Part shown: positions 1,832-34,626 of the stretch, piece after piece
How positions within the stretch are numbered: position 1 is the first letter of the stretch
Layout of the letters: each line of letters begins with the position of its first letter
DNA from: Dimorphilus gyrociliatus
Lineage: Eukaryota > Animalia > Annelida
Reading direction: 5' to 3'
Assembly: GCA_904063045.1 (NCBI GenBank)
Contig: CAJFCJ010000012.1
Coordinates: forward strand, 496,001-560,000
DNA: 64,000 nt
Notes under the pieces: model-generated
The model's database searches: none
The model's input: the letters and a program-made list of their open reading frames with translations, nothing else
What the model was told of the DNA's origin: nothing
Position numbers and translations under genes: made by a program

Positions 1832-4800
1832 GAGAAGCTTTTTCTGCTGAAGTGAATCAGAGAGTAGCTACACTTGCACTGAGTGAAAATTTGTATTTGA
1901 ACAACAAAGTATGTTTGTACTTAATGTCTTATAAAATAATAATGCGAAAGCAACCTTACTGTTTCCATGACGCACCTATTCATTATTAAAATGTTTCCAA
2001 GTTCCACTTTTTTATATTAATTAATAAGCATAGTATATTTTTAAAATAGTCAAATGATCAATATGATTGGTTTTGGGCTGATGGCTCTAAACTTGGGTCC
2101 AGAAGTTATTGGAAAGATAAAGCACCAACGTTAAAACCGTTTGTATTTTTTGCAAAATTGTTTAAATGATTCACTAATCAATTAATTGTGGTAAATTAGT
2201 AATGAGAGAAACTCTACTTGTGTAGTTGTTGCTAGAGACGGACAAAGTAAAAAAAATTGGATGCATAAATCGTGTGATGAATCGTTTGGTAGTCTTTGTA
2301 TGCATAAATCCGGTAAATTTAGAATATTAATTGAGTTTTTAAATAATAAAACAATAAAATTTGTATTAAAGGAACCTGCGCAGCTAATTGGGATATTCAT
2401 CATAACTATTGTTATAGATTTTTCACTACAGAAAATATGAGAACTTCGTTCAACAATGCAAATAAGTATTGCACTGATAGAAAGAGTACAATGTTACATA
2501 TAAAGACGTAAATTTTCAATAAGAGAAATATCTAGTTTATAGTTTAATAAATGTATATGAAATTTTAGGGAAAACGATCAGAATTTTGTTAATAGACGTC
2601 TTGCTGGATATTTTAGTTCTGGGGCAAGATATTTATGGTTAGGAATTAATGATGCAGGTTCAAATGATCGAGATCGATGCAAATTTAAATGGACTGATGG
2701 AACTTCTATTACAAGCACTTATAAAGTAAATTTTATTTTATAGCTTGAAATAACATAAAAGTGTTCATTTTATATTTATTTTGCAGAATTGGCTGTCAGA
2801 TACCCCTCTCTGCTTTCCCAATACGAAAATTATCTCTTATGGATATATTTTCACGGGTAATACGCATTTACAAAACTGATGGATTTTAAAAAACAAAACA
2901 ATTGTCTTAAACTTTATCCTTCTATTTTAATAGGTGATCGAGCTGGTAGATGGAGAACGAGTGAAAATCCGGCTCAATTGAACGCATTTGGTTGTAAGAT
3001 TAGAGTAGGTCAAGAACCTACTGAACCAACTCAACCTCCCGGTAACTATTTATTTATCAATTGAAAAGCATGACTTAATCATAAAAAATTGTGTTTCCAA
3101 TAGTTCAATATTCTTGCCCAAGTGGATGGAAGTTGAATGATAAAAAGTGCTATGCATTCTTCGATTTAAAAATGAATTTCTTAGAAGCCCGTGATCAATG
3201 TTTAAAAAATGATTCACAATTAGTACAAGTGTATTCTCCTGATGAAAACGCCTTTGTCACTGGTCTTAGTAACAACGTTATCTATATGGGGTTGGCCAGT
3301 CTTACTCCAAAAGGCAATTACACCTGGATAGGTGTGCCAAGTGGAATAGTACATATTTAGCCTACATATATATAAGCCGTTAGATTTTGATTATTATTTT
3401 TTTTATCAAATTCTAGCCTAGTTATACGAATTGGGCTCCAGGAGAACCTAGTCATACACATGGTAATATAGAAGAAGATTGTGGAACAATGAAATTTTCA
3501 CCTGAGACTGATAAAGGAAAATGGAATGATGTACCTTGTGATTATAAGTATAGTTTCGTTTGTGAAAAGCCTGCGAGTAAGTTGTTTCTTGTTTAAATCT
3601 TCCTTAGGTAGCAAAATATATTGTTTACGTTAACCAGGTGTGGTTGGTAATCCTACTACTCCTCCAGTGACAGTTCCAACTCGTAAGCTGTTTCAATTTA
3701 TATTCATTTTATAGCTTTAAAAACTTATTCTTTTTCACAAAGCGAGCTGGACAAATAAATGTGGTATCAATTGGTCTGATCGCCTTAGATCTCCCTATTG
3801 TTATATGGTTATATCCACAACTATTTCGTGGCTTTTCGCGAAAAGAACTTGTAATCACTATGGTGGGGAGTTAGCTTCCATACACGATGCTGCAGAAGAA
3901 GCGTACATAAGAGAACTTGCTGTTCAAGGTTCACAGTCAGCTTATTGGATAGGGATGAATGACAGATCTCAGAAAAAGTTTTGGAAATGGTCAGATGCTA
4001 GTCCCGTGAATTTTATAAACTGGGGCCCGTCTTTCCCTAATCCTTCTGCAGGTAAACGAGATTGCGGTGTGTATGTGCCAGACAAAAGAGAATGGCAAAC
4101 TCGCGACTGCCGAGGAGGAAGAAACGGTATTGTCTGTAAAAAGAGAGGAAAACTACCTGATGGTCCTGCGACATCTCCAGCAACTCCCCCTGTAACAAAA
4201 CCGGGTATGAAATATGGATGTCTAGCTGGATGGAAGGAATGGTCTCAAGGAAAACACTGTTACAAATTTATTAACGAAACAAAGACTTTTGACGAAGCCC
4301 GTAGAGGATGTCAAGATTCCGCGATAGGTGCCGATTTAGTATCAATTCAATCAACGGAAGAAAATGACTATATCTTTGGAAATTTAAATCAAAGTAAGAA
4401 ATATTTTAAGCCAACTCTAATTTATATAAGAAAATTGAATATCTGATTAGTCGGAAGTTCTAACGGCGTTCCAAGAGCATGGATAGGAATGAGAAACATT
4501 TTTGGCTATGGTCATTTTGCCTGGTTAGATTTAAGTGAATTTAGCTTTTCAAACTGGGGTGATAGTCAACCGGAAAGCTCTAATACAATTGGTTCGAAAT
4601 GTACTAGTATGAATCTACAAGTAAGAAAGTTATAAAATATTTGTTTTCCAAATATGTAATTGACCTATGACTTTACTGTTAGAATAATCGTTGGAGAACA
4701 AACGATTGTACAAACAATTTACAAGGTTTTGTTTGCAAAACGAAAAAAATTTTGGTTCCTGCAGTTACGCCAACGATAGCTAATTGTCCAATGGTCAGAG

Positions 4801-7800
4801 AAGCATTTAATATTCATTGAATTTAAAGTTGAGATGAAAAGCATATCTATATATTACAGGGCACTGACTTCGAATACAGACACTCGTGTTATAAACTAGT
4901 TAGGAATCAAATGAGCTTTGACAACTCAAGAAATAATTGTAATAGTACATTCGATGGCGATTTAGTCGATATGGCTGATAAGTAATTTTTAAATTTTAAC
5001 AATAATTTATCATTTTATTTTCATCTTTTTTATTACTAATAATGTAATATAGGCAAGAATTGGCTAGAATAGTTGGTGAACTGCCTAGACACGAAGTAGC
5101 TCATTTCTGGATTGCTTTTTCAAATAGAGGTTCAAGTGGAGGAAAGGAGTGGAAATGGGTTACAGGTATGCCAAATGCTGTAACTAATTGGGACGAAGGG
5201 GAGCCCGAACAAAAGGAAGGTTTATGTGCTGTCATTGAGTCAGGAAGACATATGGGCTTATGGAAGACTCGGAGATGTGGAATAGAAATTTGGCATATAT
5301 GCAAGAGAACGAAAATCGGTTGGACAACTCCACCATTACCTACTACAACTGCCATTCCTGTTTGTCATGAGGGCTGGGAACCCCCAAGCTTTGTAACCGA
5401 TTCTAATGCTTGCTACAAGGTTTTCACTTTTACTCAATTGTTATCAAAATATAGTTTAAATGGTTTATAGATATTTCGAGAGAGTAAAACTTGGCAAAGC
5501 GCAAGAGAATACTGTAGCAGTATCGGATCTAAATTAGCCACAATTCATAGCGATAAAGAAAATATGCACATAGGACGTCTAACGCCCTTGTAAGTATGGA
5601 TATTAGAAAAACAGAGTCTAATTATTATAACGCCAATATTCTTCATGTTAGTGACCAGTATTGGATCGGTCTATATAACAATTCCGGAAGTGAGCATTGT
5701 CTAAATTTCACTATATATTTTATTTTTATAATACACTTAATTTACATCATTACACCATAAATTCCAACCAATAGAGCATACTTGGGTAGATGAATCTCAA
5801 GTTGATTATGAAAATTGGGAGCCAAATCAACCAGATAGTCATAACGGAATGGAAAATTGTGTTCAAATAAATACTCAAGGAACTGCTGGAGATAAATGGA
5901 GATATAAAAGTTGTTTCGTTAGTCAGCCATTTGTTTGTAGATTGGAGAAAGGACAAAAACCAAAAGATCCTCCGACATTACCCCCACCACCCACTGCGAT
6001 ATGCGGCAACGATGATAGTTGGAGAAAAATAGGAGACTATTGTTATTACGTATCTAAGGTTAATGAAGATAAGAATTGGTTTAGAGCTAGAGAGTTTTGT
6101 AAGAGAAATGGTGGAGAACTAACAAGTATCCATGATGCTGATGTTAATAATAAACTGACATCTTGGGTAAAAACAATTGCACAAATACAATGATATAGTA
6201 TAAAGTGTTTTTTTAAATAGTCTAGTAGCTTAACTCATGTAAGGAAAACATTCTGGATTGGTTTGAATGAACTTGAGAGAACTGGATATAAGTAATAAAT
6301 AAAAAGTCTTTGACTTGTGTAACTCAGTTTTTTTCCTTAATTAGGTGGAGTGACGGAAGTCCTAGAGACTTTTTCAATTGGGCCCCAGGAGAGCCTAATG
6401 ACCATCATTTTGGCCAGCTATGTGTTAATTTATATAGTTTTAGCAGTGAGTTTAAAATTATACAAAGATATTTGAATATTTTGCCTAATTCATTAACTTT
6501 TAAAAGGTTTCTGGAACGACGATAATTGCGGTGACGTTCTACCCTATATATGTAGAAGGTGGAATGGAACAGGTACCCGACCAACAATTCCTCCCGATCC
6601 TCCAATGCCTGGCTTTTGCCCAGAGGGATTCTTTTCAATAGGTTAAGTCTAATTACAGATTAGAAGTTTAGTAGTATTTATAAAAAAATATTTCTTTTAG
6701 ATAATCGCTGTTATAAAGCATTCAATGACTTAAAAACGTGGGAAGATGCAGTCGTTGCCTGTAGAAATTTAAGCTCAGATTCATTAGTTCCTTACGATTT
6801 GGCGAGTGTAATAAACAGTAGAGAGCAAAAATTAATTAATGTTGTTGTTGGAGATGCCGCTTACAGGTTTTAGATTAACTAGTTTTGTCCAATAGCTCAA
6901 CTTATTTATTGTTCATATGTAATATTTAGATTTTACAAAGATAATCCTGGTACATCAAAAACTATTACATATTGGATTGGACTTTCGAGTAGAGTTAGAG
7001 TAAGTTTGGAGTAGGATAATTCTGATAGACTTTTTATGACTCGAACAATTACAGGATAGACCTCAAAAGTTCCAATGGGTCGATAACGCACCTTTTGACT
7101 ATAGCAACTGGGCTGATGGTGAACCAAATGGTCAACCTTATGAAGTGAGAAATTCCTAAATGAAAATAATTTACTAATTATTTAATTACAACATGTGTAA
7201 TTTCGTTAGGTTCAATGTACTGAGGCATATTCAAATAATGACCGTAACTATGGAAAATGGAATGATCATGACTGCAATTCGGACATTGGATATATATGCC
7301 AATATAGAAAAAGTTATTTCGTCCAAGCTATACAGCAAGCTTTATTCATTTTATTTCTTTTGTTTTTCTAGATGCTCAAAACGAGATTACCTCTGCTCCT
7401 CCACCTCCTCCCAGATGTGATAATGGATGGGATGCATACAATCATAATTGCTATAAATTCTATTCCAATAAATCAACGTGGGAGGAAGCAAACAATAAAT
7501 GTAAAGAAGGGAGAGGTTAGTTAATGATATCCTATACGGCTATACTAATCTTAACTAAATTTAATTTGAACAAACGTTTAGGAACATTGGCTTCAATACA
7601 TGGACTGGCTGAGAATTCTTACTTAGAGCTATATAACGAAATGAATTCTAATGTTGATGAACTTTGGATTGGTTTAAAAGCTATAGATTCGAATGTAATT
7701 GGCTTTTTCTTATTTATTATTTACACTTGAGTACTTCGATTGCCATTTGTTATCTTTTTTGTGTTTTTGGCTAGGCATCCTCCATAACTTACGAATGGAT

Positions 7801-9564
7801 AGATAAGTGGCCAGTTACCTATACTAATTGGGGGACACAGCAATCATGTGGAGCAGAATGCGGTTGTGTTTCAATGTCTAAAAATGGCACATGGTCGGAT
7901 ATAAAATGTTCCACGAAACAGGCATTTTTGTGTAGGCAGACTAATGGTAATTAAAACACGTTTTTAAATTAAAAATTTAATATATTTTAAAAATCATATA
8001 TAGTAATATACAGTATATATAATTTATATATTTCCGTATATAGAAGAGTTAAGAGAATTGCTTACATGCCCTCTTTTTTTTCTATTATCACATTAATTTG
8101 CTTTAGTAAGGCTGAGAACGATAAGAGAGCTTTTCATCCTTTAACAAGTAAAAAATTCATTTTAGTTCATGGCGATGAAAGATTATACAGTATTGCTATT
8201 TTAAAATGTATCAATCTTCGAGGACTAAAATCATTATAGTTCTCAACTGGTCGGCATATAGTCTAGTTTTTACTATAATTATTTTATTGCTGGTTAGTCA
8301 CAGAAAGTCTACTTACAAGAAAGAATTAATTTTAGTATCAAATGTACAATATCTTGAAAAAGTTGTATTTTATAATGTCAACTAAAGAGTAACGAAAAAA
8401 TCTTAGATAATTACTTTTGGGATGAACTTGCAATCGTGTGTATGCAATTTTACGATTAGTTTTATGCAAGGAAATAGCTTAAAGTTAAATATGCATAGGT
8501 ATAAGTATAATTATAAATAAATTGAGTATGTATGCATTTTAGAACAACCTCCAACGACTCCTCCCCCTCCTCCTCCTTCTCCTTGTATAAACGACGATTG
8601 GAAATATTTTAATGGATATTGCTACAAACTAGGCGATATGGGAAGTTGGGCTGATGGTAGAATGTCCTGCGAGTAGGTTATCATCTATTAGTTTGAAACG
8701 TTATTTCTATTACTTTTTTTTCAAAGAATGGCTGGAGCTACTTTAGCATCTATTCATGGCGAAGATGAAAACAAGTTCATATATGAGTTAGGAAAGGGAA
8801 AAATAGGAGATATTTGGATTGGAGCAGTCAAAATTGGTGGTATTAATGGAAGTGAGTGGAAAAACATTCCATATTTAGCTTCTAATCTATTTTTAACTAT
8901 TTTTCTCAGCATTTAAATGGATAGATGATACGGCATTTGGTAATTATAAAAACTGGGCCAAAGATGAACCCAATGATGATGATGGTAGGTCAATTTGTGT
9001 GGAAATGTATACGGGAACTTACGAAACAGGCAAATGGAACGACCACTTGTGTGATAAGAGATGCAATCATATTTGTAAAATGCCAGTTCGTTAGTATTCA
9101 TCAAAAACACTAGCATGAATTAATACGACTATTTATAGCTAATAATGCTTCAACGGCAACACCCTCTACAACTGTACCACCAGTTCCAACTCGGATGACA
9201 AAAACTACACAGGTCAAACCAACTGATCCCGGAAAACCGCCAGTTCGTTCAAGTGAGATATCTATTAATATAATTTAGAATAAAATTTAACAAAAACTTT
9301 TTTTCAAAAGCAATATCGCTAAGACCTTCACACTTTACGGATCCAATTAGAAGGACTAGAGGTCCTGGAGAAAAACAAACTTCAGGTCTATCTGGAGGAG
9401 CTAAAGGAGGAATAGCCTTCGCTGTAGTATGCTTACTCTTAGCAGTAATTTGTATTGGTCTTTTCGTCGCCAGAAGAAAAAATAAAATTCCTCAAAGTAT
9501 TTTAACAGTTGCTGAAGGAAGAGGCTCTGGTATTACTAATCCAGGCTATGGACAGTTAAATTAA
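1832..9564 (+). CDS. Macrophage mannose receptor-like type I membrane protein with tandem C-type lectin domains (10 complete plus 1 partial); 5' end unresolved
   Basis: Repeated C-x3-W...CY...W-x-G...NW...WND/W-x-x-x-x-C motifs across more than 25 small exons, with Pro/Thr-rich linkers. Last exon gives a TM helix (GGIAFAVVCLLLAVICIGLFVA) and tail ...ITNPGYGQLN* (stop 9562-9564). The start coordinate is the most upstream plausible exon (1832-1908) and is tentative; no signal peptide was found. Confidence 0.88.
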
Positions 9565-27644: not shown

Positions 27645-30600
27645 ATGATTGTGGTGTCTGTACTGTTATTTCTATTCCTAATAAATACATCCTTTCCTCA
27701 GAATATAAAATTGCACGGATGTGGAGCATCTTTACCGGCAGAAGTTTATGAAGCTTGGGTACCAGCGTTTGAAAGTTATCGCCGTGAATTTGTGAATATT
27801 GACTTTGAATATTACGCGACAGGAAGTGGAGAAGCTATTCAGGCCATACATGGGGGAAACGAATCAAGTTTAAATGTGTGTCTACTTAATGATCTAGGAT
27901 TTTTCGGCTCGGATATTCCATTGTCACCAAGCGATTATGATAAAAATCCCAATTTACAAATGCTCCCTATTCTAGGAGGGTTAGTTTTATTACTATCTGT
28001 CAATGTTTAAATTAATTCTTATATTATATAAATACTTAATTAATCGAATAATCCTATGCGAGTGTATGTTTAAATTCATTAGGAGTGTTGCCCTGGCCTA
28101 TAATTTAAAAGGGATAAAAAACTTGGTTCTTGAAAAAGATCATGTTGTAAAAATATATGATGGAACTTTTAAATGGTGGAATGAAACCGAATTACAAAGC
28201 GCTAATCCAGATATTAAACTACCTGAAGAAAGAATATCAGTTGTAGCAAGGTCTGACAACTCTGGAACGACGCAAATATTTACGGAAACATTAAGTGCAA
28301 TATCAAAAGAATGGAAAGAAAAATATGGTGTTTTTTCAGAAGGTTTTAATGAAGCTAATGGTTCCTCAAAATGGCCAGACGGAGTTATTTCATTTCGCCT
28401 TAAAAGAAATCGAGGTGTCTCGGGAATACTGTTGTCTTACCAAAATTCAATCGGTTACATTTCAACAGCTGATGCAAACACAGCGCTGCTAACTTATGCT
28501 CGAATCAAAGAGGGTAACAAAATAGTCGACATAGAACCGGATAGAATGCAGGAAACCATGCAGAGAGCTATGAGGCACTTTACAAATAGAATGACTGTTA
28601 CTTTAGCAGAGCATACATATGCCGACGAATACCCATTCATAGGATATACGTATATGGTATTTAATAAAACCTCAGAAAGCAACTGTAAAAGGATGAGAGA
28701 GTTAGTCCGATATTTTTATTGGATTACAAAAGAACCATTTCCACAAAATGATGCCAAAGATTTTAAAATGGCTGGTGTCCCAAAGAAAGTATCAGATTAC
28801 CTTTTTTCGGAAGTTATAGATAAAATACGATGTGGTGGGGATAATATGCTAAAAGTTGCTAGGGATCAAATGGATGCTGAAGAGCTATCAAAGCAAAAGT
28901 GGCGAATTCCTGTAATAATTGCCATTCCAATTATAAGTCTGCTAATTTTATCGTTGATATCCTACTTGATAGTTCAACAGGTTAAATTTATAAAATTCTT
29001 ATTAATATTTAAGCTTTTACTCATTTCATAAGGCTTTTATATTCATTTCTTATTCAACAGATTCGACTAAGAAGATCCCTCTTAACGGATGATTGGAAAA
29101 TACCGATAGAAGAAATTATTCTCAGATGGTCCAGAAAAGATGGATTATTAAGGCCCGACGGCTCAAAATACCAAAATTCTATGCAAAGTGTTGCTTCATT
29201 AACAGTTTCTGCTATAACTAACTTTTCGTATACAACAACAACTGGAGGGACAGGTATAGGAAAAAGTGTTGAGGCGATTGGATTGTGGAAAGAAAAGGCC
29301 GTTGTTTTAAGGTCTTTTCCCAATGCTTTGAGCTTGGAGAAGATAACATGCAAGAAATGTCTCATCTTTCTAAGGGATAAAATTAACCACTTTAATGTTG
29401 TCTCTTTTCTTGGTGTAACAATACTGGATGACGCAGCTTACTTAGTAAGCGATCATTCGCCCAAGGGAACTTTACGAGACGTTGTTCAAGATGATCGATA
29501 TAATTTGGACGAGAACATTAAATTTTCATTGGCATTAGATGTCGCTGGAGGTTTGAAATATTTACATTCACAAAATCTAAGTCACGGCAATTTGACAAGT
29601 GATTCATGCGTTGTCGATCAACGCTGGAACGTTAGAATCGCCGATTGGGAATACTCCAAATTATCCGAGTTCTCAATCGGTTTAAGTAATGCTACCTTAA
29701 ATTCAAATTTCCATGATTCTGAAAAAGATTATGATGTGGAAGCTAGGAATTCTATGTGGCATGCACCGGAGGTTCTAAAGGTAATATATACTTTGTTTTA
29801 ATTTTTCTCAAAATCTATCACTTGCTTAGCGAAGAAGTTAACAGACTTTCTTCATTTCGACATCCTGCTACCTTATACTATCCAATTTAGAACTAATTAC
29901 ATGCGTTTATACTAAATATAGCACATATAGATTTATTAAGATACTATATGTACTAAACGTATGTAAAACTATATATTTATTTATTTATTTATAGAATACA
30001 AAAAGATTATTTCATGTTTTATATTCTATTTAAATTCTATCAAAAAGAAGCGTCTCTTTAGTCGTTTTCCTATGATTTTAGGGAGAATGTACGACGAAAG
30101 CCTCAGATGTCTATAGTTTTTCTATTATTCTGGTTGAAATATTTACGAAGGAAGATCCATATTATGACTTAGCGGAAAGTTTAAGTCCTGTAAAGATAAT
30201 TGAAGAAATAAAAACTAAAGACATACGACCAAACTTAGACGATCCAAACTTAACCTCAATAAAGAACACTTTAGAAAAATGTTGGTCAATAACACCGAGC
30301 AAAAGACTATCGTCATCAGCAGTTTGTAAAGAATTGAAATCTCAGAGGCCCAGTAAAAAGAGTGTCGTAGATTGTATGATGGAAGCTGTTGAAGGGTATG
30401 TAACCAAACTAGAAGAAAAGGTTAAGGATAGAACGAGGGAGTTGGAAATGGCGAATTTAGCAACAGAAGCTTTGCTTCATCAGATTTTGCCGCCATCCGT
30501 AGCTAAAAAGCTGTCTTCAGGCGAGATTGTTGATCCAGAAAAATTTGATGGCGTAACAATTTTCTTTTCGGATATTGTTGGATTTACATCTTTATCTGCA

Positions 30601-31232
30601 GAAAGCTCACCTTGGGAGATTGTGCAACTGCTGAATGAATTATATTCAGTTTTTGATACCATTATTGATAAAAAAGATGTTTATAAAGTTGAAACTATTG
30701 GTGATGCTTATATGGTAGTATCTGGATTGCCGTCTCGAAATGGAGATAAGCATGCCGACTGCATAACCGAAATGGCTATAGATTTCTTAGCAAGTGTCAA
30801 AATATTCAAGATAAGACACAAGCCCGATAAGAAGCTATTGTTAAGAGCTGGTGTACATTCCGGTCCAGTTGTTGCAGGAGTTGTTGGACAGAAAATGCCA
30901 AGGTAAAAAAAAATACAATAATAAGATTGTTATAAATAATGGATGAATTCTTGTAATTGATCGTGTTTTTTTCCTTGTTTTAATCCATTAGATATTGCCT
31001 ATTTGGAGATACAGTTAATACAGCAAGTAGAATGGAATCCACTTCAGAACCTTTAAAGATTCAGATATCACCGGAAACATTTCAGCTTTTAAATAAAAAG
31101 AGGGAATATTTGTTTAAAGAGAGAGAAAATGTTGAAGTTAAAGGAAAAGGGAAGATGACAACATATTTCGTAGAGAGCAAAATAAATTATCAACCATACA
31201 TTCCTCCAAATCTTTTTGATAGTAACTATTAA
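27645..31232 (+). CDS. Receptor (transmembrane) guanylyl cyclase with an extracellular PstS-type phosphate-binding domain; exons 27645-27979, 28083-28980, 29061-29780, 30082-30902, 30992-31232
   Basis: Signal peptide MIVVSVLLFLFLINTSFP. PstS-like [66 protein letters not shown]. Kinase-homology domain (HGNL, DVYSFSIILVEI), coiled-coil hinge LEEKVKDRTREL, cyclase FSDIVGFT...KVETIGDAYMVVSG...RYCLFGDTVNTASRMES. All introns are GT-AG and frame-consistent. Confidence 0.95.
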
Positions 31233-33576: not shown

Positions 33577-34626
33577 TCATTTAAGAAAATTACAACTGCA
33601 ATATAAAAACAAATCTTTTAGCGATTTTCTAAACGATTTAGATGAAAAACTATACAAGAAAAAATTAACAGAAAAGTTTACATAGTAAAACATTTGAAAA
33701 ACATCTTGCACTTGCTTTAATTCTAGCGTCACATAATTATTGCCACGCTTTACTATAAAAAATAGCTTTATACAGTATGATGGTGCACTAAGCAGAACGA
33801 AACATGCGGCTATAATAATCAGAAGTTTAGCTGATCTTCTTTGTCGCGCTCTGGAATTTTCAGGACAATTATTTTGAATTTCACTATTTATTTGCAAAGG
33901 TTGATTGCATTCGGTCGCTTGATCGGACGATACTCTTCCGTTTTTTGAAATAGATGTACTTGATCTATTTCTAGGAGGAGTATATTTTAATAATCTTGCA
34001 GCTAATAAGACATTTAAAGGTACAATTACCAGAAATGGAAGAAAAAGATTAACAAAAGCATCAAACGCGTTCATAATTTCTATAAGTTTATAGAGCGAAA
34101 GTCTTGGAGAGCAATACCCTCCCTCATTTACATAGTAAGACCATAAAACGAAGGAATATAATATAGCAGCAAAAACAACAAGACAACTGCATATTTTAAC
34201 AGTACTTTCCCTCATTACCCATCTTTTAAATTTTAAAGGAAAGAATACAGCAAAAAACCTTTCTAAAGTGAACAAGCACATAACCCATGTACTCAAAAAA
34301 CTGCACACAAATGTTACATACGGTATTAACTGACATAAAACCGGAAGATGGTAGATATTTATTTCAAACATTCCAAGCCATGTTAATAGAAGGGCTATAA
34401 GAAAGAGGTTGTCAGAAACAGCAAGGATTGAAAGGTAGATTCCGCAATTCTGATGTTGTAGTTGCTTGAAGCGTTTCATGGCAAAAACAAATATTGATAG
34501 TGAGTTTCCCATAAGACCAATAGCAATAATTGCTGGTAGACAATATAAATTCAAGTAATGCGTAAATAATCCAAGAGCCGTTTCCCTTAAATTCGACGTT
34601 GTTAGGTTCTTAGTAGAATTATCCAT
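33577..34626 (-). CDS. Single-exon class A peptide-receptor-like GPCR (TRH/FMRFamide-receptor-like orphan)
   Basis: TM1 GLMGN, TM2 LAVSD, TM3 TLERFFAV, TM6 FVLLSAPSY, TM7 NFSVNFFLY; N-terminal sequons. Confidence 0.9.
   Translation of the reverse strand: MDNSTKNLTTSNLRETALGLFTHYLNLYCLPAIIAIGLMGNSLSIFVFAMKRFKQLQHQNCGIYLSILAVSDNLFLIALLLTWLGMFEINIYHLPVLCQLIPYVTFVCSFLSTWVMCLFTLERFFAVFFPLKFKRWVMRESTVKICSCLVVFAAILYSFVLWSYYVNEGGYCSPRLSLYKLIEIMNAFDAFVNLFLPFLVIVPLNVLLAARLLKYTPPRNRSSTSISKNGRVSSDQATECNQPLQINSEIQNNCPENSRARQRRSAKLLIIIAACFVLLSAPSYCIKLFFIVKRGNNYVTLELKQVQDVFQMFYYVNFSVNFFLYSFSSKSFRKSLKDLFLYCSCNFLK

What the first reader, a model, noticed from the sequence alone, without database searches (positions are those of the whole stretch)
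27705..28460. All canonical phosphate ligands of PstS are conserved in the cyclase ectodomain
Seen, mapped by hand to mature E. coli PstS: T10 to S (GASLP), F11 to L (backbone contact), S38 (TGSG), D56 (GSD), R135, D137, S139, G140 and T141 (ARSDNSGT), and N177 (KRNRG vs KGNDG). Known: D56 accepts the phosphate proton and excludes sulfate; R135 pairs with D137. Inference: the domain is under selection to bind orthophosphate rather than being a relic scaffold. The unusual Glu after GSG (GSGE instead of GSSG/GSGG) and a roughly 10-residue Cys-containing insertion before GSD could lower or tune affinity toward a sensing range.
Basis: partly seen in the sequence, partly recalled or inferred. Interest (0 to 1): 0.78.

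Follow-up and report, generated by a model that had tools for sequence, protein, structure and literature searches.

The report
Phosphate-binding ectodomain on animal guanylyl cyclase
A small marine worm (Dimorphilus gyrociliatus) has an expressed receptor guanylyl cyclase whose outer domain is a bacterial-type phosphate-binding protein with its whole phosphate pocket preserved under selection, which makes it a testable candidate for a direct extracellular phosphate receptor in animals.

Summary
Observation confirmed. The window holds a five-exon, transcribed gene (27645-31232, +) of the annelid Dimorphilus gyrociliatus. It encodes a receptor guanylyl cyclase whose ectodomain is a complete PstS-type phosphate-binding protein.

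A profile alignment to E. coli PstS puts the window residues on T10, F11, S38, D56, R135, D137, S139, G140 and T141. Six of the eight canonical ligands are identical. Two are conservative: T10S, and F11L, which is a backbone contact. N177 is also present, but the ligand list I could cite omits it, and it varies in the family.

The ligand set is kept in about 55 cyclase-bearing relatives from molluscs, annelids and a nemertean (R135 55/55, G140 54/55, S38 20/20, D56 19/20; permutation p<1e-5). It is also kept, wherever an exon was found, in both paralogs of this genome, and in an ortholog contig (dN/dS 0.08-0.12). An AlphaFold model of the exon-2 product matches PstS-phosphate crystal structures (TM 0.83).

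Selection on the pocket is therefore shown. Phosphate binding and phosphate-gated cGMP synthesis are inferred. The Glu after GSG, an Ala at the otherwise invariant G41, a Cys at position 7 and the Cys-bearing insertion are specific to this gene and conserved in its ortholog. Their effect on affinity is unknown.

I found no paper on this fusion. The scan's other notes on this gene cover this same stretch, not other DNA.

The parts
27645..27979 (+). Exon 1. It encodes the signal peptide (about residues 1-19) and the first part of the PstS N-lobe, which carries the T10, F11, S38 and D56 equivalents.
   Evidence: The ORF and the GT donor are. The spliced contig joint 27979|28083 is. Exon 1 matches TIGR00975 positions 1-48 (E 2.8e-4).
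27980..28082 (+). Intron 1 (103 nt, GT..AG). It falls at E. coli PstS residue 77/78.
   Evidence: Exon 2 starts at E. coli residue 79.
28083..28980 (+). Exon 2. It encodes the rest of the PstS domain (E. coli residues 79-302 and beyond) and the single transmembrane helix (28906-28974).
   Evidence: PF12849 at 53 bits (cut-off 27). TIGR00975 at 142 bits. PDB PstS chains at E 2e-21. The AlphaFold model has pLDDT 96 and TM 0.83 to PstS-Pi complexes.
27729..27734 (+). Codons for Ser29 and Leu30, the equivalents of PstS T10 and F11.
   Evidence: hmmalign. In the family, position 10 is S in 15/16 and position 11 is F in 15/16.
27825..27836 (+). Codons for the S-G-E-A motif: Ser61 = S38, Gly62 = S39, Glu63 = G40, Ala64 = G41.
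   Evidence: S38 is 20/20 in the family. G41 is invariant in 20/20 family and 25/25 bacterial-size relatives but is Ala here. Glu at 40 is 0/20. Both changes are kept in the ortholog.
27849..27899 (+). Approximate bounds of the lineage-specific insertion between the S38 helix and the strand leading to D56. It contains Cys79 (27879-27881).
   Evidence: The S38..D56 span is 30 residues here, 19-25 in the family (mode 22) and 19 in E. coli. In the ortholog the sequence has diverged but the Cys is kept.
27720..27722 (+). Cys26 at PstS position 7, three residues before the T10 equivalent. It is unique to this gene and its ortholog.
   Evidence: 0 of 16 family members have Cys at this position. The ortholog keeps it. 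A disulfide with Cys79 is an inference only.
27912..27914 (+). Codon for Asp90, the equivalent of PstS D56 (the proton-accepting ligand).
   Evidence: D is 19/20 in the family, with one E.
28249..28269 (+). Codons for R-S-D-N-S-G-T, the equivalents of PstS R135, D137, S139, G140 and T141.
   Evidence: Family counts: R 55/55, D 48/55 (+4 E), S 51/55, G 54/55, T 45/55 (+9 S).
28408..28410 (+). Codon for Asn, the equivalent of PstS N177. It is present, but it is not a canonical ligand and is not conserved.
   Evidence: N in 24/55.
28684..28686 (+). Family-conserved Cys (aligned to E. coli position 267). It is the likely disulfide partner of the Cys at 28831-28833.
   Evidence: Cys is present in 54/56 at each of the two columns and absent from E. 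coli PstS.
28831..28833 (+). Family-conserved Cys (aligned to E. coli position 314).
29061..29780 (+). Exon 3: the juxtamembrane region and the first part of the kinase-homology domain.
   Evidence: The joints are. PF07714 at E 1.6e-16.
30082..30902 (+). Exon 4: the end of the kinase-homology domain, the linker helix and the first two thirds of the cyclase catalytic domain.
   Evidence: The joints are. PF00211 at E 7.6e-41, and the HNOBA-type linker.
30992..31232 (+). Exon 5: the last third of the cyclase domain, the C-terminal tail and the stop codon.
   Evidence: The joint is. PF00211 at E 6e-21. The translation shows the guanylyl-type Cys and the catalytic Asn/Arg motif.

Best explanation
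The finding lies in the ectodomain of a single-pass receptor guanylyl cyclase of Dimorphilus gyrociliatus. The domain order is signal peptide, PstS-type two-lobed binding domain, transmembrane helix, kinase-homology domain, linker helix and a guanylyl-type cyclase domain.

Shown:
- The ectodomain is a true PstS homolog with the PstS fold.
- It carries the complete set of phosphate-ligating residues.
- Those positions are under purifying selection, both across a large spiralian family and in this gene itself.

Inferred:
- One orthophosphate ion binds in the cleft between the two lobes, through the same hydrogen-bond network as in E. coli PstS. Asp56 accepts the phosphate proton and so excludes sulfate.
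- Lobe closure on binding is passed through the C-terminal end of the domain, about 25 residues from the membrane, to the dimeric intracellular part. This changes cGMP synthesis.
- The gene would then be a phosphate-gated cyclase. It would read either ambient phosphate (chemosensation) or body-fluid phosphate.
- The features peculiar to this gene (Glu40, Ala41, Cys7, the Cys-bearing insertion) are functional, because they are conserved in the ortholog. What they do is unknown.
For: Homology and fold:
- Exon 2 matches PDB PstS chains at E 2e-21, TIGR00975 at 142 bits and PF12849 at 53 bits.
- The AlphaFold model of the exon-2 product has pLDDT 96.3. Its best 49 PDB matches are all phosphate-binding proteins, led by E. 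coli PstS-Pi complexes at TM 0.83 and rmsd 2.3 A.
- The complete ectodomain of the Owenia relative gives TM 0.88.

Ligands: the mapping is, and the canonical list is from PMC6549937.

Selection:
- Ligand columns have a mean top-residue frequency of 0.94, against 0.55 for all columns (p<1e-5).
- 48/55 relatives keep the C-lobe set and 15/16 keep the N-lobe set.
- The paralogs on contigs C6 and C1 keep the ligand residues in every exon I found.
- Against the ortholog, dN/dS is 0.079 for exon 1 and 0.119 for exon 2. The stretch from IKLHGCGAS through FEY is identical in both species although dS is above 1.3.

The gene is real and transcribed: a spliced contig has four GT..AG joints and no mismatch.

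Signalling output is intact: kinase-homology and cyclase domains are present, with the metal-binding Asp residues, the Glu and Cys that specify GTP, and the catalytic Asn/Arg.

The topology fits an extracellular domain: an N-terminal hydrophobic leader, one 23-residue hydrophobic helix followed by basic residues, and four N-x-S/T sequons beyond the leader peptide, with a fifth inside it.

Precedents:
- Pi-loaded PstS activates the Pseudomonas chemoreceptor CtpL (PMC8050422).
- NIT-domain guanylyl cyclases of Platynereis use a bacterial-type anion-sensor domain (bioRxiv 10.1101/2023.08.02.551600).
Against: - No binding or activity was measured, and no model of the window's own complete ectodomain was made.
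- This gene sits on a long stem branch (0.8 changes per site). Exon-wise it scores below the TIGR00975 equivalog cut-off (about 162 bits against 205), whereas the relatives P0006 and P0011 pass it.
- It changes an otherwise invariant Gly (G41A) and places a Glu in the first turn of the helix that starts at S38. It also has an extra insertion, and Leu where the family has Phe at position 11.
- Buried polar cleft residues could be kept partly for folding.
- The N-lobe statistics rest on only 16-20 sequences, because most database gene models lack exon 1.
- Some family members have lost a ligand. One paralog in this genome has no detectable cyclase domain. The family is therefore not functionally uniform.
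Confidence: 0.62

Rival explanations
1. Phosphate is a permanently bound structural cofactor, and the real signal is something else. That could be a peptide, a protein or a surface ligand that docks onto the closed, phosphate-loaded domain, much as loaded PstS docks onto PstCA or onto CtpL.
For: - PstS proteins bind Pi very tightly (KD about 9 nM for the Pseudomonas protein, PMC8050422). An unmodified site could therefore be saturated in most waters.
- In bacteria it is the loaded PstS that a partner recognises.
- The family has its own conserved Cys pair and surface insertions, which could form an interface.
- From my own knowledge, the ANP receptor ectodomain holds a bound chloride.
Against: - No partner is known, and nothing in the window suggests one.
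- The same ligand conservation is expected under direct sensing.
- The changes near the S38 helix in this gene fit altered affinity at least as well.
Confidence: 0.15
2. The pocket binds a different small ligand, such as arsenate, vanadate, phosphite, pyrophosphate or a small phosphoester, rather than orthophosphate.
For: - This gene departs from the family at F11L, G40E and G41A and has an insertion.
- It sits on a long branch.
- PstS relatives are known to bind arsenate weakly (my own knowledge of the PBP/DING work).
Against: - All eight ligand positions, together with the Arg-Asp salt link, match PstS.
- In PstS the closed cleft buries the ion completely and leaves no room for a larger group (established structural knowledge).
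- The best 49 structural matches are all phosphate-binding proteins.
Confidence: 0.12
3. The domain is a ligand-free scaffold or dimerisation module. The conserved residues are kept only because they stabilise the fold.
For: - Many receptor ectodomains derived from periplasmic binding proteins have lost their ancestral ligand (general knowledge).
- No binding data exist for this family.
Against: - The ligand columns are far more conserved than the average column (p<1e-5).
- That includes surface-of-cleft hydroxyls (S38, S139, T141), which contribute little to core packing.
- They stay conserved across phyla, paralogs and the ortholog.
Confidence: 0.06

Closest known systems
E. coli / Yersinia PstS, the periplasmic phosphate-binding protein of the PstSCAB transporter (PDB 1IXH, 2ABH, 2Z22)
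   Same: - Same two-lobed fold: TM 0.83 for the exon-2 product and 0.88 for a relative's whole ectodomain.
- Same eight phosphate ligands and the R135-D137 salt link.
- Best family match is the PstS equivalog TIGR00975.
   Different: - It is not a free periplasmic protein that serves an ABC transporter.
- It is the N-terminal ectodomain of a eukaryotic single-pass receptor with intracellular kinase-homology and cyclase domains.
- It has introns, N-glycosylation sequons and a family-specific Cys pair.
- It is 28% identical to E. coli PstS and, scored exon by exon, falls below the equivalog cut-off.
NIT-domain guanylyl cyclases (Platynereis NIT-GC1/2; bioRxiv 10.1101/2023.08.02.551600)
   Same: - An animal membrane guanylyl cyclase whose usual ligand-binding domain is replaced by a bacterial-type small-anion sensor domain.
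- Found in spiralians among other phyla.
- The assay used for NIT-GC1 (a cGMP reporter in COS-7 cells) could be reused directly.
   Different: - The sensor domain is unrelated. NIT is helical, whereas PstS is a type II binding-protein fold.
- No PstS or PBP domain is mentioned in that paper.
Canonical receptor guanylyl cyclases (natriuretic peptide receptors, sea-urchin speract receptor, retinal GCs, C. elegans GCY salt receptors)
   Same: - Same intracellular architecture and intact guanylyl-type catalytic motifs.
- Database pipelines name the relatives after these proteins.
- From my own knowledge, C. elegans GCYs are proposed to be direct receptors for inorganic ions.
   Different: Their ectodomain is the ANF_receptor (LIVBP-like, type I) fold. 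Pfam finds PBP_like_2 here and no ANF_receptor match.
Pseudomonas aeruginosa CtpL chemoreceptor with PstS (PMC8050422)
   Same: PstS serves as the phosphate-recognising input of a signalling receptor for responses to low phosphate.
   Different: In Pseudomonas, PstS is a separate protein that docks onto the receptor and the output is chemotaxis signalling. Here the domain is fused to the receptor and the output is cGMP.
Venus kinase receptors of invertebrates (PMC4026697)
   Same: A binding-protein-type clamshell ectodomain joined by one transmembrane helix to an intracellular catalytic domain.
   Different: It has a different clamshell class, a tyrosine kinase output and amino-acid ligands.

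Membership tests
PstS phosphate-binding proteins (Pfam PF12849 PBP_like_2; NCBIfam TIGR00975) | Sequence match above the Pfam gathering score | tested here: met
   The exon-2 product scores 53.1 bits against a cut-off of 27. The exon-1 product alone scores 17.9 bits.
PstS phosphate-binding proteins (Pfam PF12849 PBP_like_2; NCBIfam TIGR00975) | Score above the TIGR00975 equivalog cut-off (205 bits) | tested here: not met
   Exon 2 scores 142.2 bits and exon 1 scores 20.1 bits, roughly 162 when added. The joined protein was not scored. The relatives P0006:1-400 (214 bits) and P0011:1-420 (206 bits) do pass.
PstS phosphate-binding proteins (Pfam PF12849 PBP_like_2; NCBIfam TIGR00975) | Two-lobed type II binding-protein fold superposable on PstS | tested here: met
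   The exon-2 model has pLDDT 96 and gives TM 0.83 and rmsd 2.3 A to 1ixi/2abh. The relative's whole domain gives TM 0.88. The window's N-lobe part (exon 1) was not modelled.
PstS phosphate-binding proteins (Pfam PF12849 PBP_like_2; NCBIfam TIGR00975) | The eight phosphate ligands T10, F11 (NH), S38, D56, R135, S139, G140 (NH), T141 | tested here: met
   The window has S, L, S, D, R, S, G, T. The ligand list is from PMC6549937. S at position 10 occurs in 10/25, and L at position 11 in 1/25, of the bacterial-size relatives.
PstS phosphate-binding proteins (Pfam PF12849 PBP_like_2; NCBIfam TIGR00975) | Measured high-affinity, sulfate-excluding orthophosphate binding | not testable with these tools
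   This needs the purified ectodomain.
PstS phosphate-binding proteins (Pfam PF12849 PBP_like_2; NCBIfam TIGR00975) | Works as the free substrate-binding subunit of a PstCAB ABC transporter | tested here: not met
   The domain is fused in one spliced transcript to a transmembrane helix, a kinase-homology domain and a cyclase domain.
Receptor (membrane) guanylyl cyclases | Signal peptide, one transmembrane helix, kinase-homology domain, linker helix and class III cyclase domain in that order | tested here: met
Receptor (membrane) guanylyl cyclases | Guanylyl-type catalytic residues (two metal-binding Asp, the Glu and Cys that select guanine, and the Arg and Asn of the transition state) | tested here: met
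   The motifs FSDIVGFT, VETIGDAY, LRAGVHSGP and YCLFGDTVNTASRME were read from the exon 4 and exon 5 translations. The assignment of roles is from my own knowledge of the family.
Receptor (membrane) guanylyl cyclases | ANF_receptor (PF01094) type ectodomain | tested here: not met
   Pfam finds only PBP_like_2 in the ectodomain of the window gene and of seven relatives.
NIT-domain guanylyl cyclases | NIT domain in the ectodomain | tested here: not met
   The Pfam scans show no NIT match.

The most novel reading that the evidence does not exclude
This gene and its spiralian relatives are phosphate-gated receptor guanylyl cyclases. They would be the first direct, single-protein receptors for extracellular orthophosphate known in animals. 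They would have been built by fusing a PstS-type binding protein to the cyclase signalling core, with paralogs tuned to different concentration ranges.
Probability: 0.45. Interest if true: 0.85.

Novelty: new variant of a known kind. Interest (0 to 1): 0.7.

Why it matters
How animal cells detect extracellular inorganic phosphate is still unsettled, and no dedicated phosphate receptor with a defined binding pocket is known.

This is a receptor with a well-understood output (cGMP). Its input domain is the best-characterised phosphate pocket in biology, kept intact under selection in molluscs, annelids and a nemertean.

The question becomes directly testable with standard tools: ectodomain binding assays, point mutants copied from 30 years of PstS work, and a cGMP reporter in cultured cells.

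It also widens the small group of animal cyclases that use bacterial-type anion sensors, of which NIT-GCs are the known example. Annotation pipelines currently name these proteins after natriuretic-peptide, speract or retinal cyclases, which hides the unusual ectodomain.

Tried and rejected
1. Two-chain prediction of the exon-1 product with the exon-2 product, to see the window's own whole cleft without joining exons. The tool did not fold it, because it treats one chain as possibly microbial. This gives no verdict, and I did not try it another way.
2. Joining the five exon translations into one protein for searching or folding. As a result, the window's own annotated protein was not recovered from the databases. 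Only the exon-2 product and a relative's full ectodomain were folded.
3. N177 as a ligand: rejected. It is not in the published ligand list, no paper in the library links Asn177 to PstS, and it is variable in the family.
4. Recent bacterial contamination or a fresh horizontal transfer: rejected.
   - The gene has spliceosomal introns that are removed in a transcript.
   - It has host-like AT-rich composition.
   - There are two paralogs on other contigs.
   - The animal sequences form one clade apart from the bacterial ones (95 SH-like support, FastTree only).
5. Literature searches for a PstS-cyclase fusion found nothing. The library is open-access only, so this is weak evidence of novelty.
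6. A literature check that a Leu occupies the F11 position in DING-type phosphate-binding proteins found nothing usable. That point rests on memory and is not used as evidence.
7. RNA evidence. Only one run holds the stretch, and its library type is not on record. It shows splicing, but not expression level, tissue or transcript ends.
Full report
**What is at the coordinates.** The window is AT-rich (24-36% GC) and comes from an animal. The paralog on another contig of the same assembly is 100% identical to the protein DgyrCDS4228 of the annelid Dimorphilus gyrociliatus. The finding (27705-28460) spans the end of exon 1, a 103-nt intron and the first part of exon 2 of one gene on the + strand.

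The exons are 27645-27979, 28083-28980, 29061-29780, 30082-30902 and 30992-31232. A 3127-nt contig in a public run lies on exactly these five blocks. It has four GT..AG skips and no mismatch, so the model is confirmed and the gene is transcribed. The run's library type is not on record.

**Domain content, exon by exon.** The hits are PBP_like_2 (exons 1 and 2), a protein-kinase-like domain (exons 3 and 4), a linker helix, and Guanylate_cyc (exons 4 and 5). A hydrophobic leader and one 23-residue hydrophobic helix followed by basic residues place the PstS-like part outside the cell. The cyclase motifs are those of an active guanylyl cyclase (the roles of the residues are from my own knowledge).

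**Checking the observation.**
- Exon 2 matches solved PstS structures at E 2e-21 (Yersinia 2z22) and 4e-20 (E. coli 1ixh).
- The printed alignment puts R-S-D-N-S-G-T on R135-A-D137-G-S139-G140-T141, and K-R-N-R-G on K175-G-N177-D-G.
- Exon 1 alone is weak against the PDB (E 0.04-1.6). It does match the first 48 positions of the PstS equivalog model TIGR00975.
- To get one register for both exons I fetched E. coli pstS and built a profile from 40 full-length domains. I then aligned the two exon products as separate rows.
- The result is T10->S, F11->L, S38=S, S39->G, G40->E, G41->A, D56=D, R135, D137, S139, G140, T141 and N177=N.

The published ligand list is T10, F11, S38, D56, R135, S139, G140 and T141, giving 12 hydrogen bonds (PMC6549937, citing Luecke and Quiocho 1990). 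D137 is the salt-link partner of R135 (my own knowledge; the D137 mutant entries appear). N177 is not in that list.

**Is the pocket under selection?** A search of 1.8 billion representative proteins with the exon-2 product gave 67 hits below 1e-30. Many of the best are 800-1150 residues long and carry PBP_like_2, kinase-like and cyclase domains.

The named hits come from these groups:
- molluscs: Haliotis, Patella, Gigantopelta, Batillaria, Bulinus, Argopecten, Mercenaria, Liolophura;
- annelids: Owenia, Paralvinella, Dimorphilus;
- a nemertean: Tubulanus.

In 55 cyclase-bearing members (median pairwise identity 40%) the counts are as follows. The N-lobe samples are small because most database models lack exon 1.

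| Position | Count |
|---|---|
| R135 | 55/55 |
| G140 | 54/55 |
| S139 | 51/55 |
| D137 | 48/55 (+4 Glu) |
| T141 | 45 Thr + 9 Ser |
| Position 10 | Ser 15/16 |
| F11 | 15/16 |
| S38 | 20/20 |
| D56 | 19/20 |

- The eight ligand columns have a mean top-residue frequency of 0.94, against 0.55 for all 320 columns. No random set of eight columns out of 100,000 reached that value.
- N177 is Asn in only 24 of 55.
- 48 of 55 members keep the whole C-lobe set, and 15 of 16 keep the N-lobe side-chain ligands.
- The two other paralogs in this genome (contigs C6 and C1) keep the ligand residues at every position for which I found an exon.

**Selection on this very gene.** Two contigs from other public samples carry an ortholog that is 75-78% identical in protein. 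Nei-Gojobori estimates give dN/dS of 0.079 for exon 1 (dS 1.89) and 0.119 for the exon-2 ectodomain (dS 1.34). dS is close to saturation, so the ratios are rough, but they are clearly far below 1. The stretch that carries the T10, F11 and S38 equivalents is identical in the two species.

**Fold.**
- The exon-2 product, folded with a 56-row family alignment, gave pLDDT 96.3. Its best PDB matches are E. coli PstS-phosphate complexes (TM 0.83, rmsd 2.3 A over 258 columns), and the first 49 matches are all phosphate-binding proteins.
- The complete ectodomain of the Owenia relative gave pLDDT 95.9 and TM 0.88 to the same entries.
- The tools give no coordinates, so I could not measure ligand distances.
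- The window's own exon-1 part was not modelled.

**What is peculiar to this gene.** It differs from the family in these ways:
- Leu at position 11, where the family has Phe in 15/16;
- Glu at position 40 (0/20 in the family);
- Ala at position 41, where Gly is invariant in 20/20 family and 25/25 bacterial-size relatives;
- Cys at position 7 (0/16);
- an S38-D56 span of 30 residues, against 19-25 in the family.

All of these, including the Cys inside the insertion, are kept in the ortholog, while the rest of the insertion has diverged. They are therefore real and constrained. The two lineage-specific cysteines may form a disulfide, but that is inference only. On a FastTree tree of the domain, the gene and its ortholog sit on a long stem (0.8) inside a well-supported group that includes the annelid Paralvinella. 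Whether these changes shift affinity cannot be decided here.

**Mechanism.**
- Shown: a PstS-fold ectodomain with a complete, selected phosphate pocket, fused in one transcript to an intact guanylyl cyclase signalling core.
- Inferred: orthophosphate binds as in PstS, the lobes close, and the movement reaches the dimeric intracellular domains through the short segment before the membrane, changing cGMP synthesis.
- Precedents: Pi-loaded PstS activates the Pseudomonas chemoreceptor CtpL, and animal NIT-domain cyclases use a bacterial-type anion sensor.
- Rivals: phosphate as a permanent cofactor with another true ligand, a different oxyanion, or a ligand-free scaffold. The last is disfavoured by the conservation data.

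**Comparison and novelty.** The protein works like a PstS joined to a receptor cyclase. It meets the fold, Pfam and ligand criteria of PstS. It fails the criterion of being a free transporter subunit, and exon-wise it fails the equivalog score. It meets all intracellular criteria of receptor guanylyl cyclases but lacks their usual ANF_receptor ectodomain.

Public pipelines record the Pfam domains. However, they name the relatives natriuretic-peptide receptor-like, speract receptor, retinal cyclase-like or gcy-like. Six literature searches found no description of the fusion. The library is open-access only, so an earlier description cannot be excluded. I rate it a new variant of a known kind.

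**Earlier notes of the scan.** The look-up showed three first-reader notes on this same stretch and none on other DNA. I saw only their titles.

Noticed in passing
L006 (G000:C1:2183000-2192999), exons near 4747-5103, 5444-5554, 5561-6028, 6441-6914, 6962-7762; downstream ORFs 7811-8359 and 8450-8788: This is a third paralog. It has a PstS-type ectodomain (S/F at 10/11, D56, R-E-D-K-S-G-T) and a kinase-homology domain. The ORFs where the cyclase domain should lie give no Guanylate_cyc match, so the cyclase may be degenerate or lost.
   Followed up: partly
L005 (G000:C6:314000-323999) 3348-5954 minus strand, plus an upstream exon at 7119-7313: A second paralog (DgyrCDS4228) encodes everything from PstS residue ~79 to the end of the cyclase in one 868-codon exon. 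The public 914-residue model starts inside the N-lobe and lacks the exon that carries the T10/F11 equivalents.
   Followed up: partly
window 28684-28686 and 28831-28833: Two cysteines are conserved in 54 of 56 family members and absent from E. coli PstS. They are probably a family-specific disulfide near the C-terminal end of the ectodomain. A third Cys column (aligned to E. coli 288) is present in 33/56 but not in this gene.
   Followed up: partly
P0003 (Chromosphaera perkinsii, 2386 aa), P0162 (Palpitomonas bilix, 1315 aa), P0175 (1360 aa): Unicellular eukaryotes have large proteins with PstS-type domains. P0003 has four, plus Ephrin_rec_like repeats and a weak, sub-threshold TRP-channel match (27.7 bits against a cut-off of 28.5). 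P0162 has PBP_like_2 plus Ephrin_rec_like. An unnamed protein, P0175, combines PBP_like_2 with a PARP domain. PstS-type sensing modules therefore seem widespread in eukaryotic surface proteins.
   Followed up: no
window 27979/28083 (intron 1): The first intron falls at E. coli PstS residue 77/78. By my recollection of the PstS fold, that is the first crossover between the two lobes. The two paralogs appear to be split at the same place.
   Followed up: no
window 33577-34626, minus strand: An intronless 349-codon ORF about 2.3 kb downstream of the cyclase gene encodes a rhodopsin-family 7TM receptor (7tm_1, E 6e-18, with weaker matches to nematode-type chemoreceptor families).
   Followed up: partly
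P0006, P0012, P0053 and the consensus of alignment A1: Several mollusc relatives score much lower on the cyclase domain (E 1e-16 to 1e-24) than the window gene or Owenia (E 5e-66). Many catalytic-region columns of the A1 consensus are variable. Part of the family may be catalytically altered.
   Followed up: no
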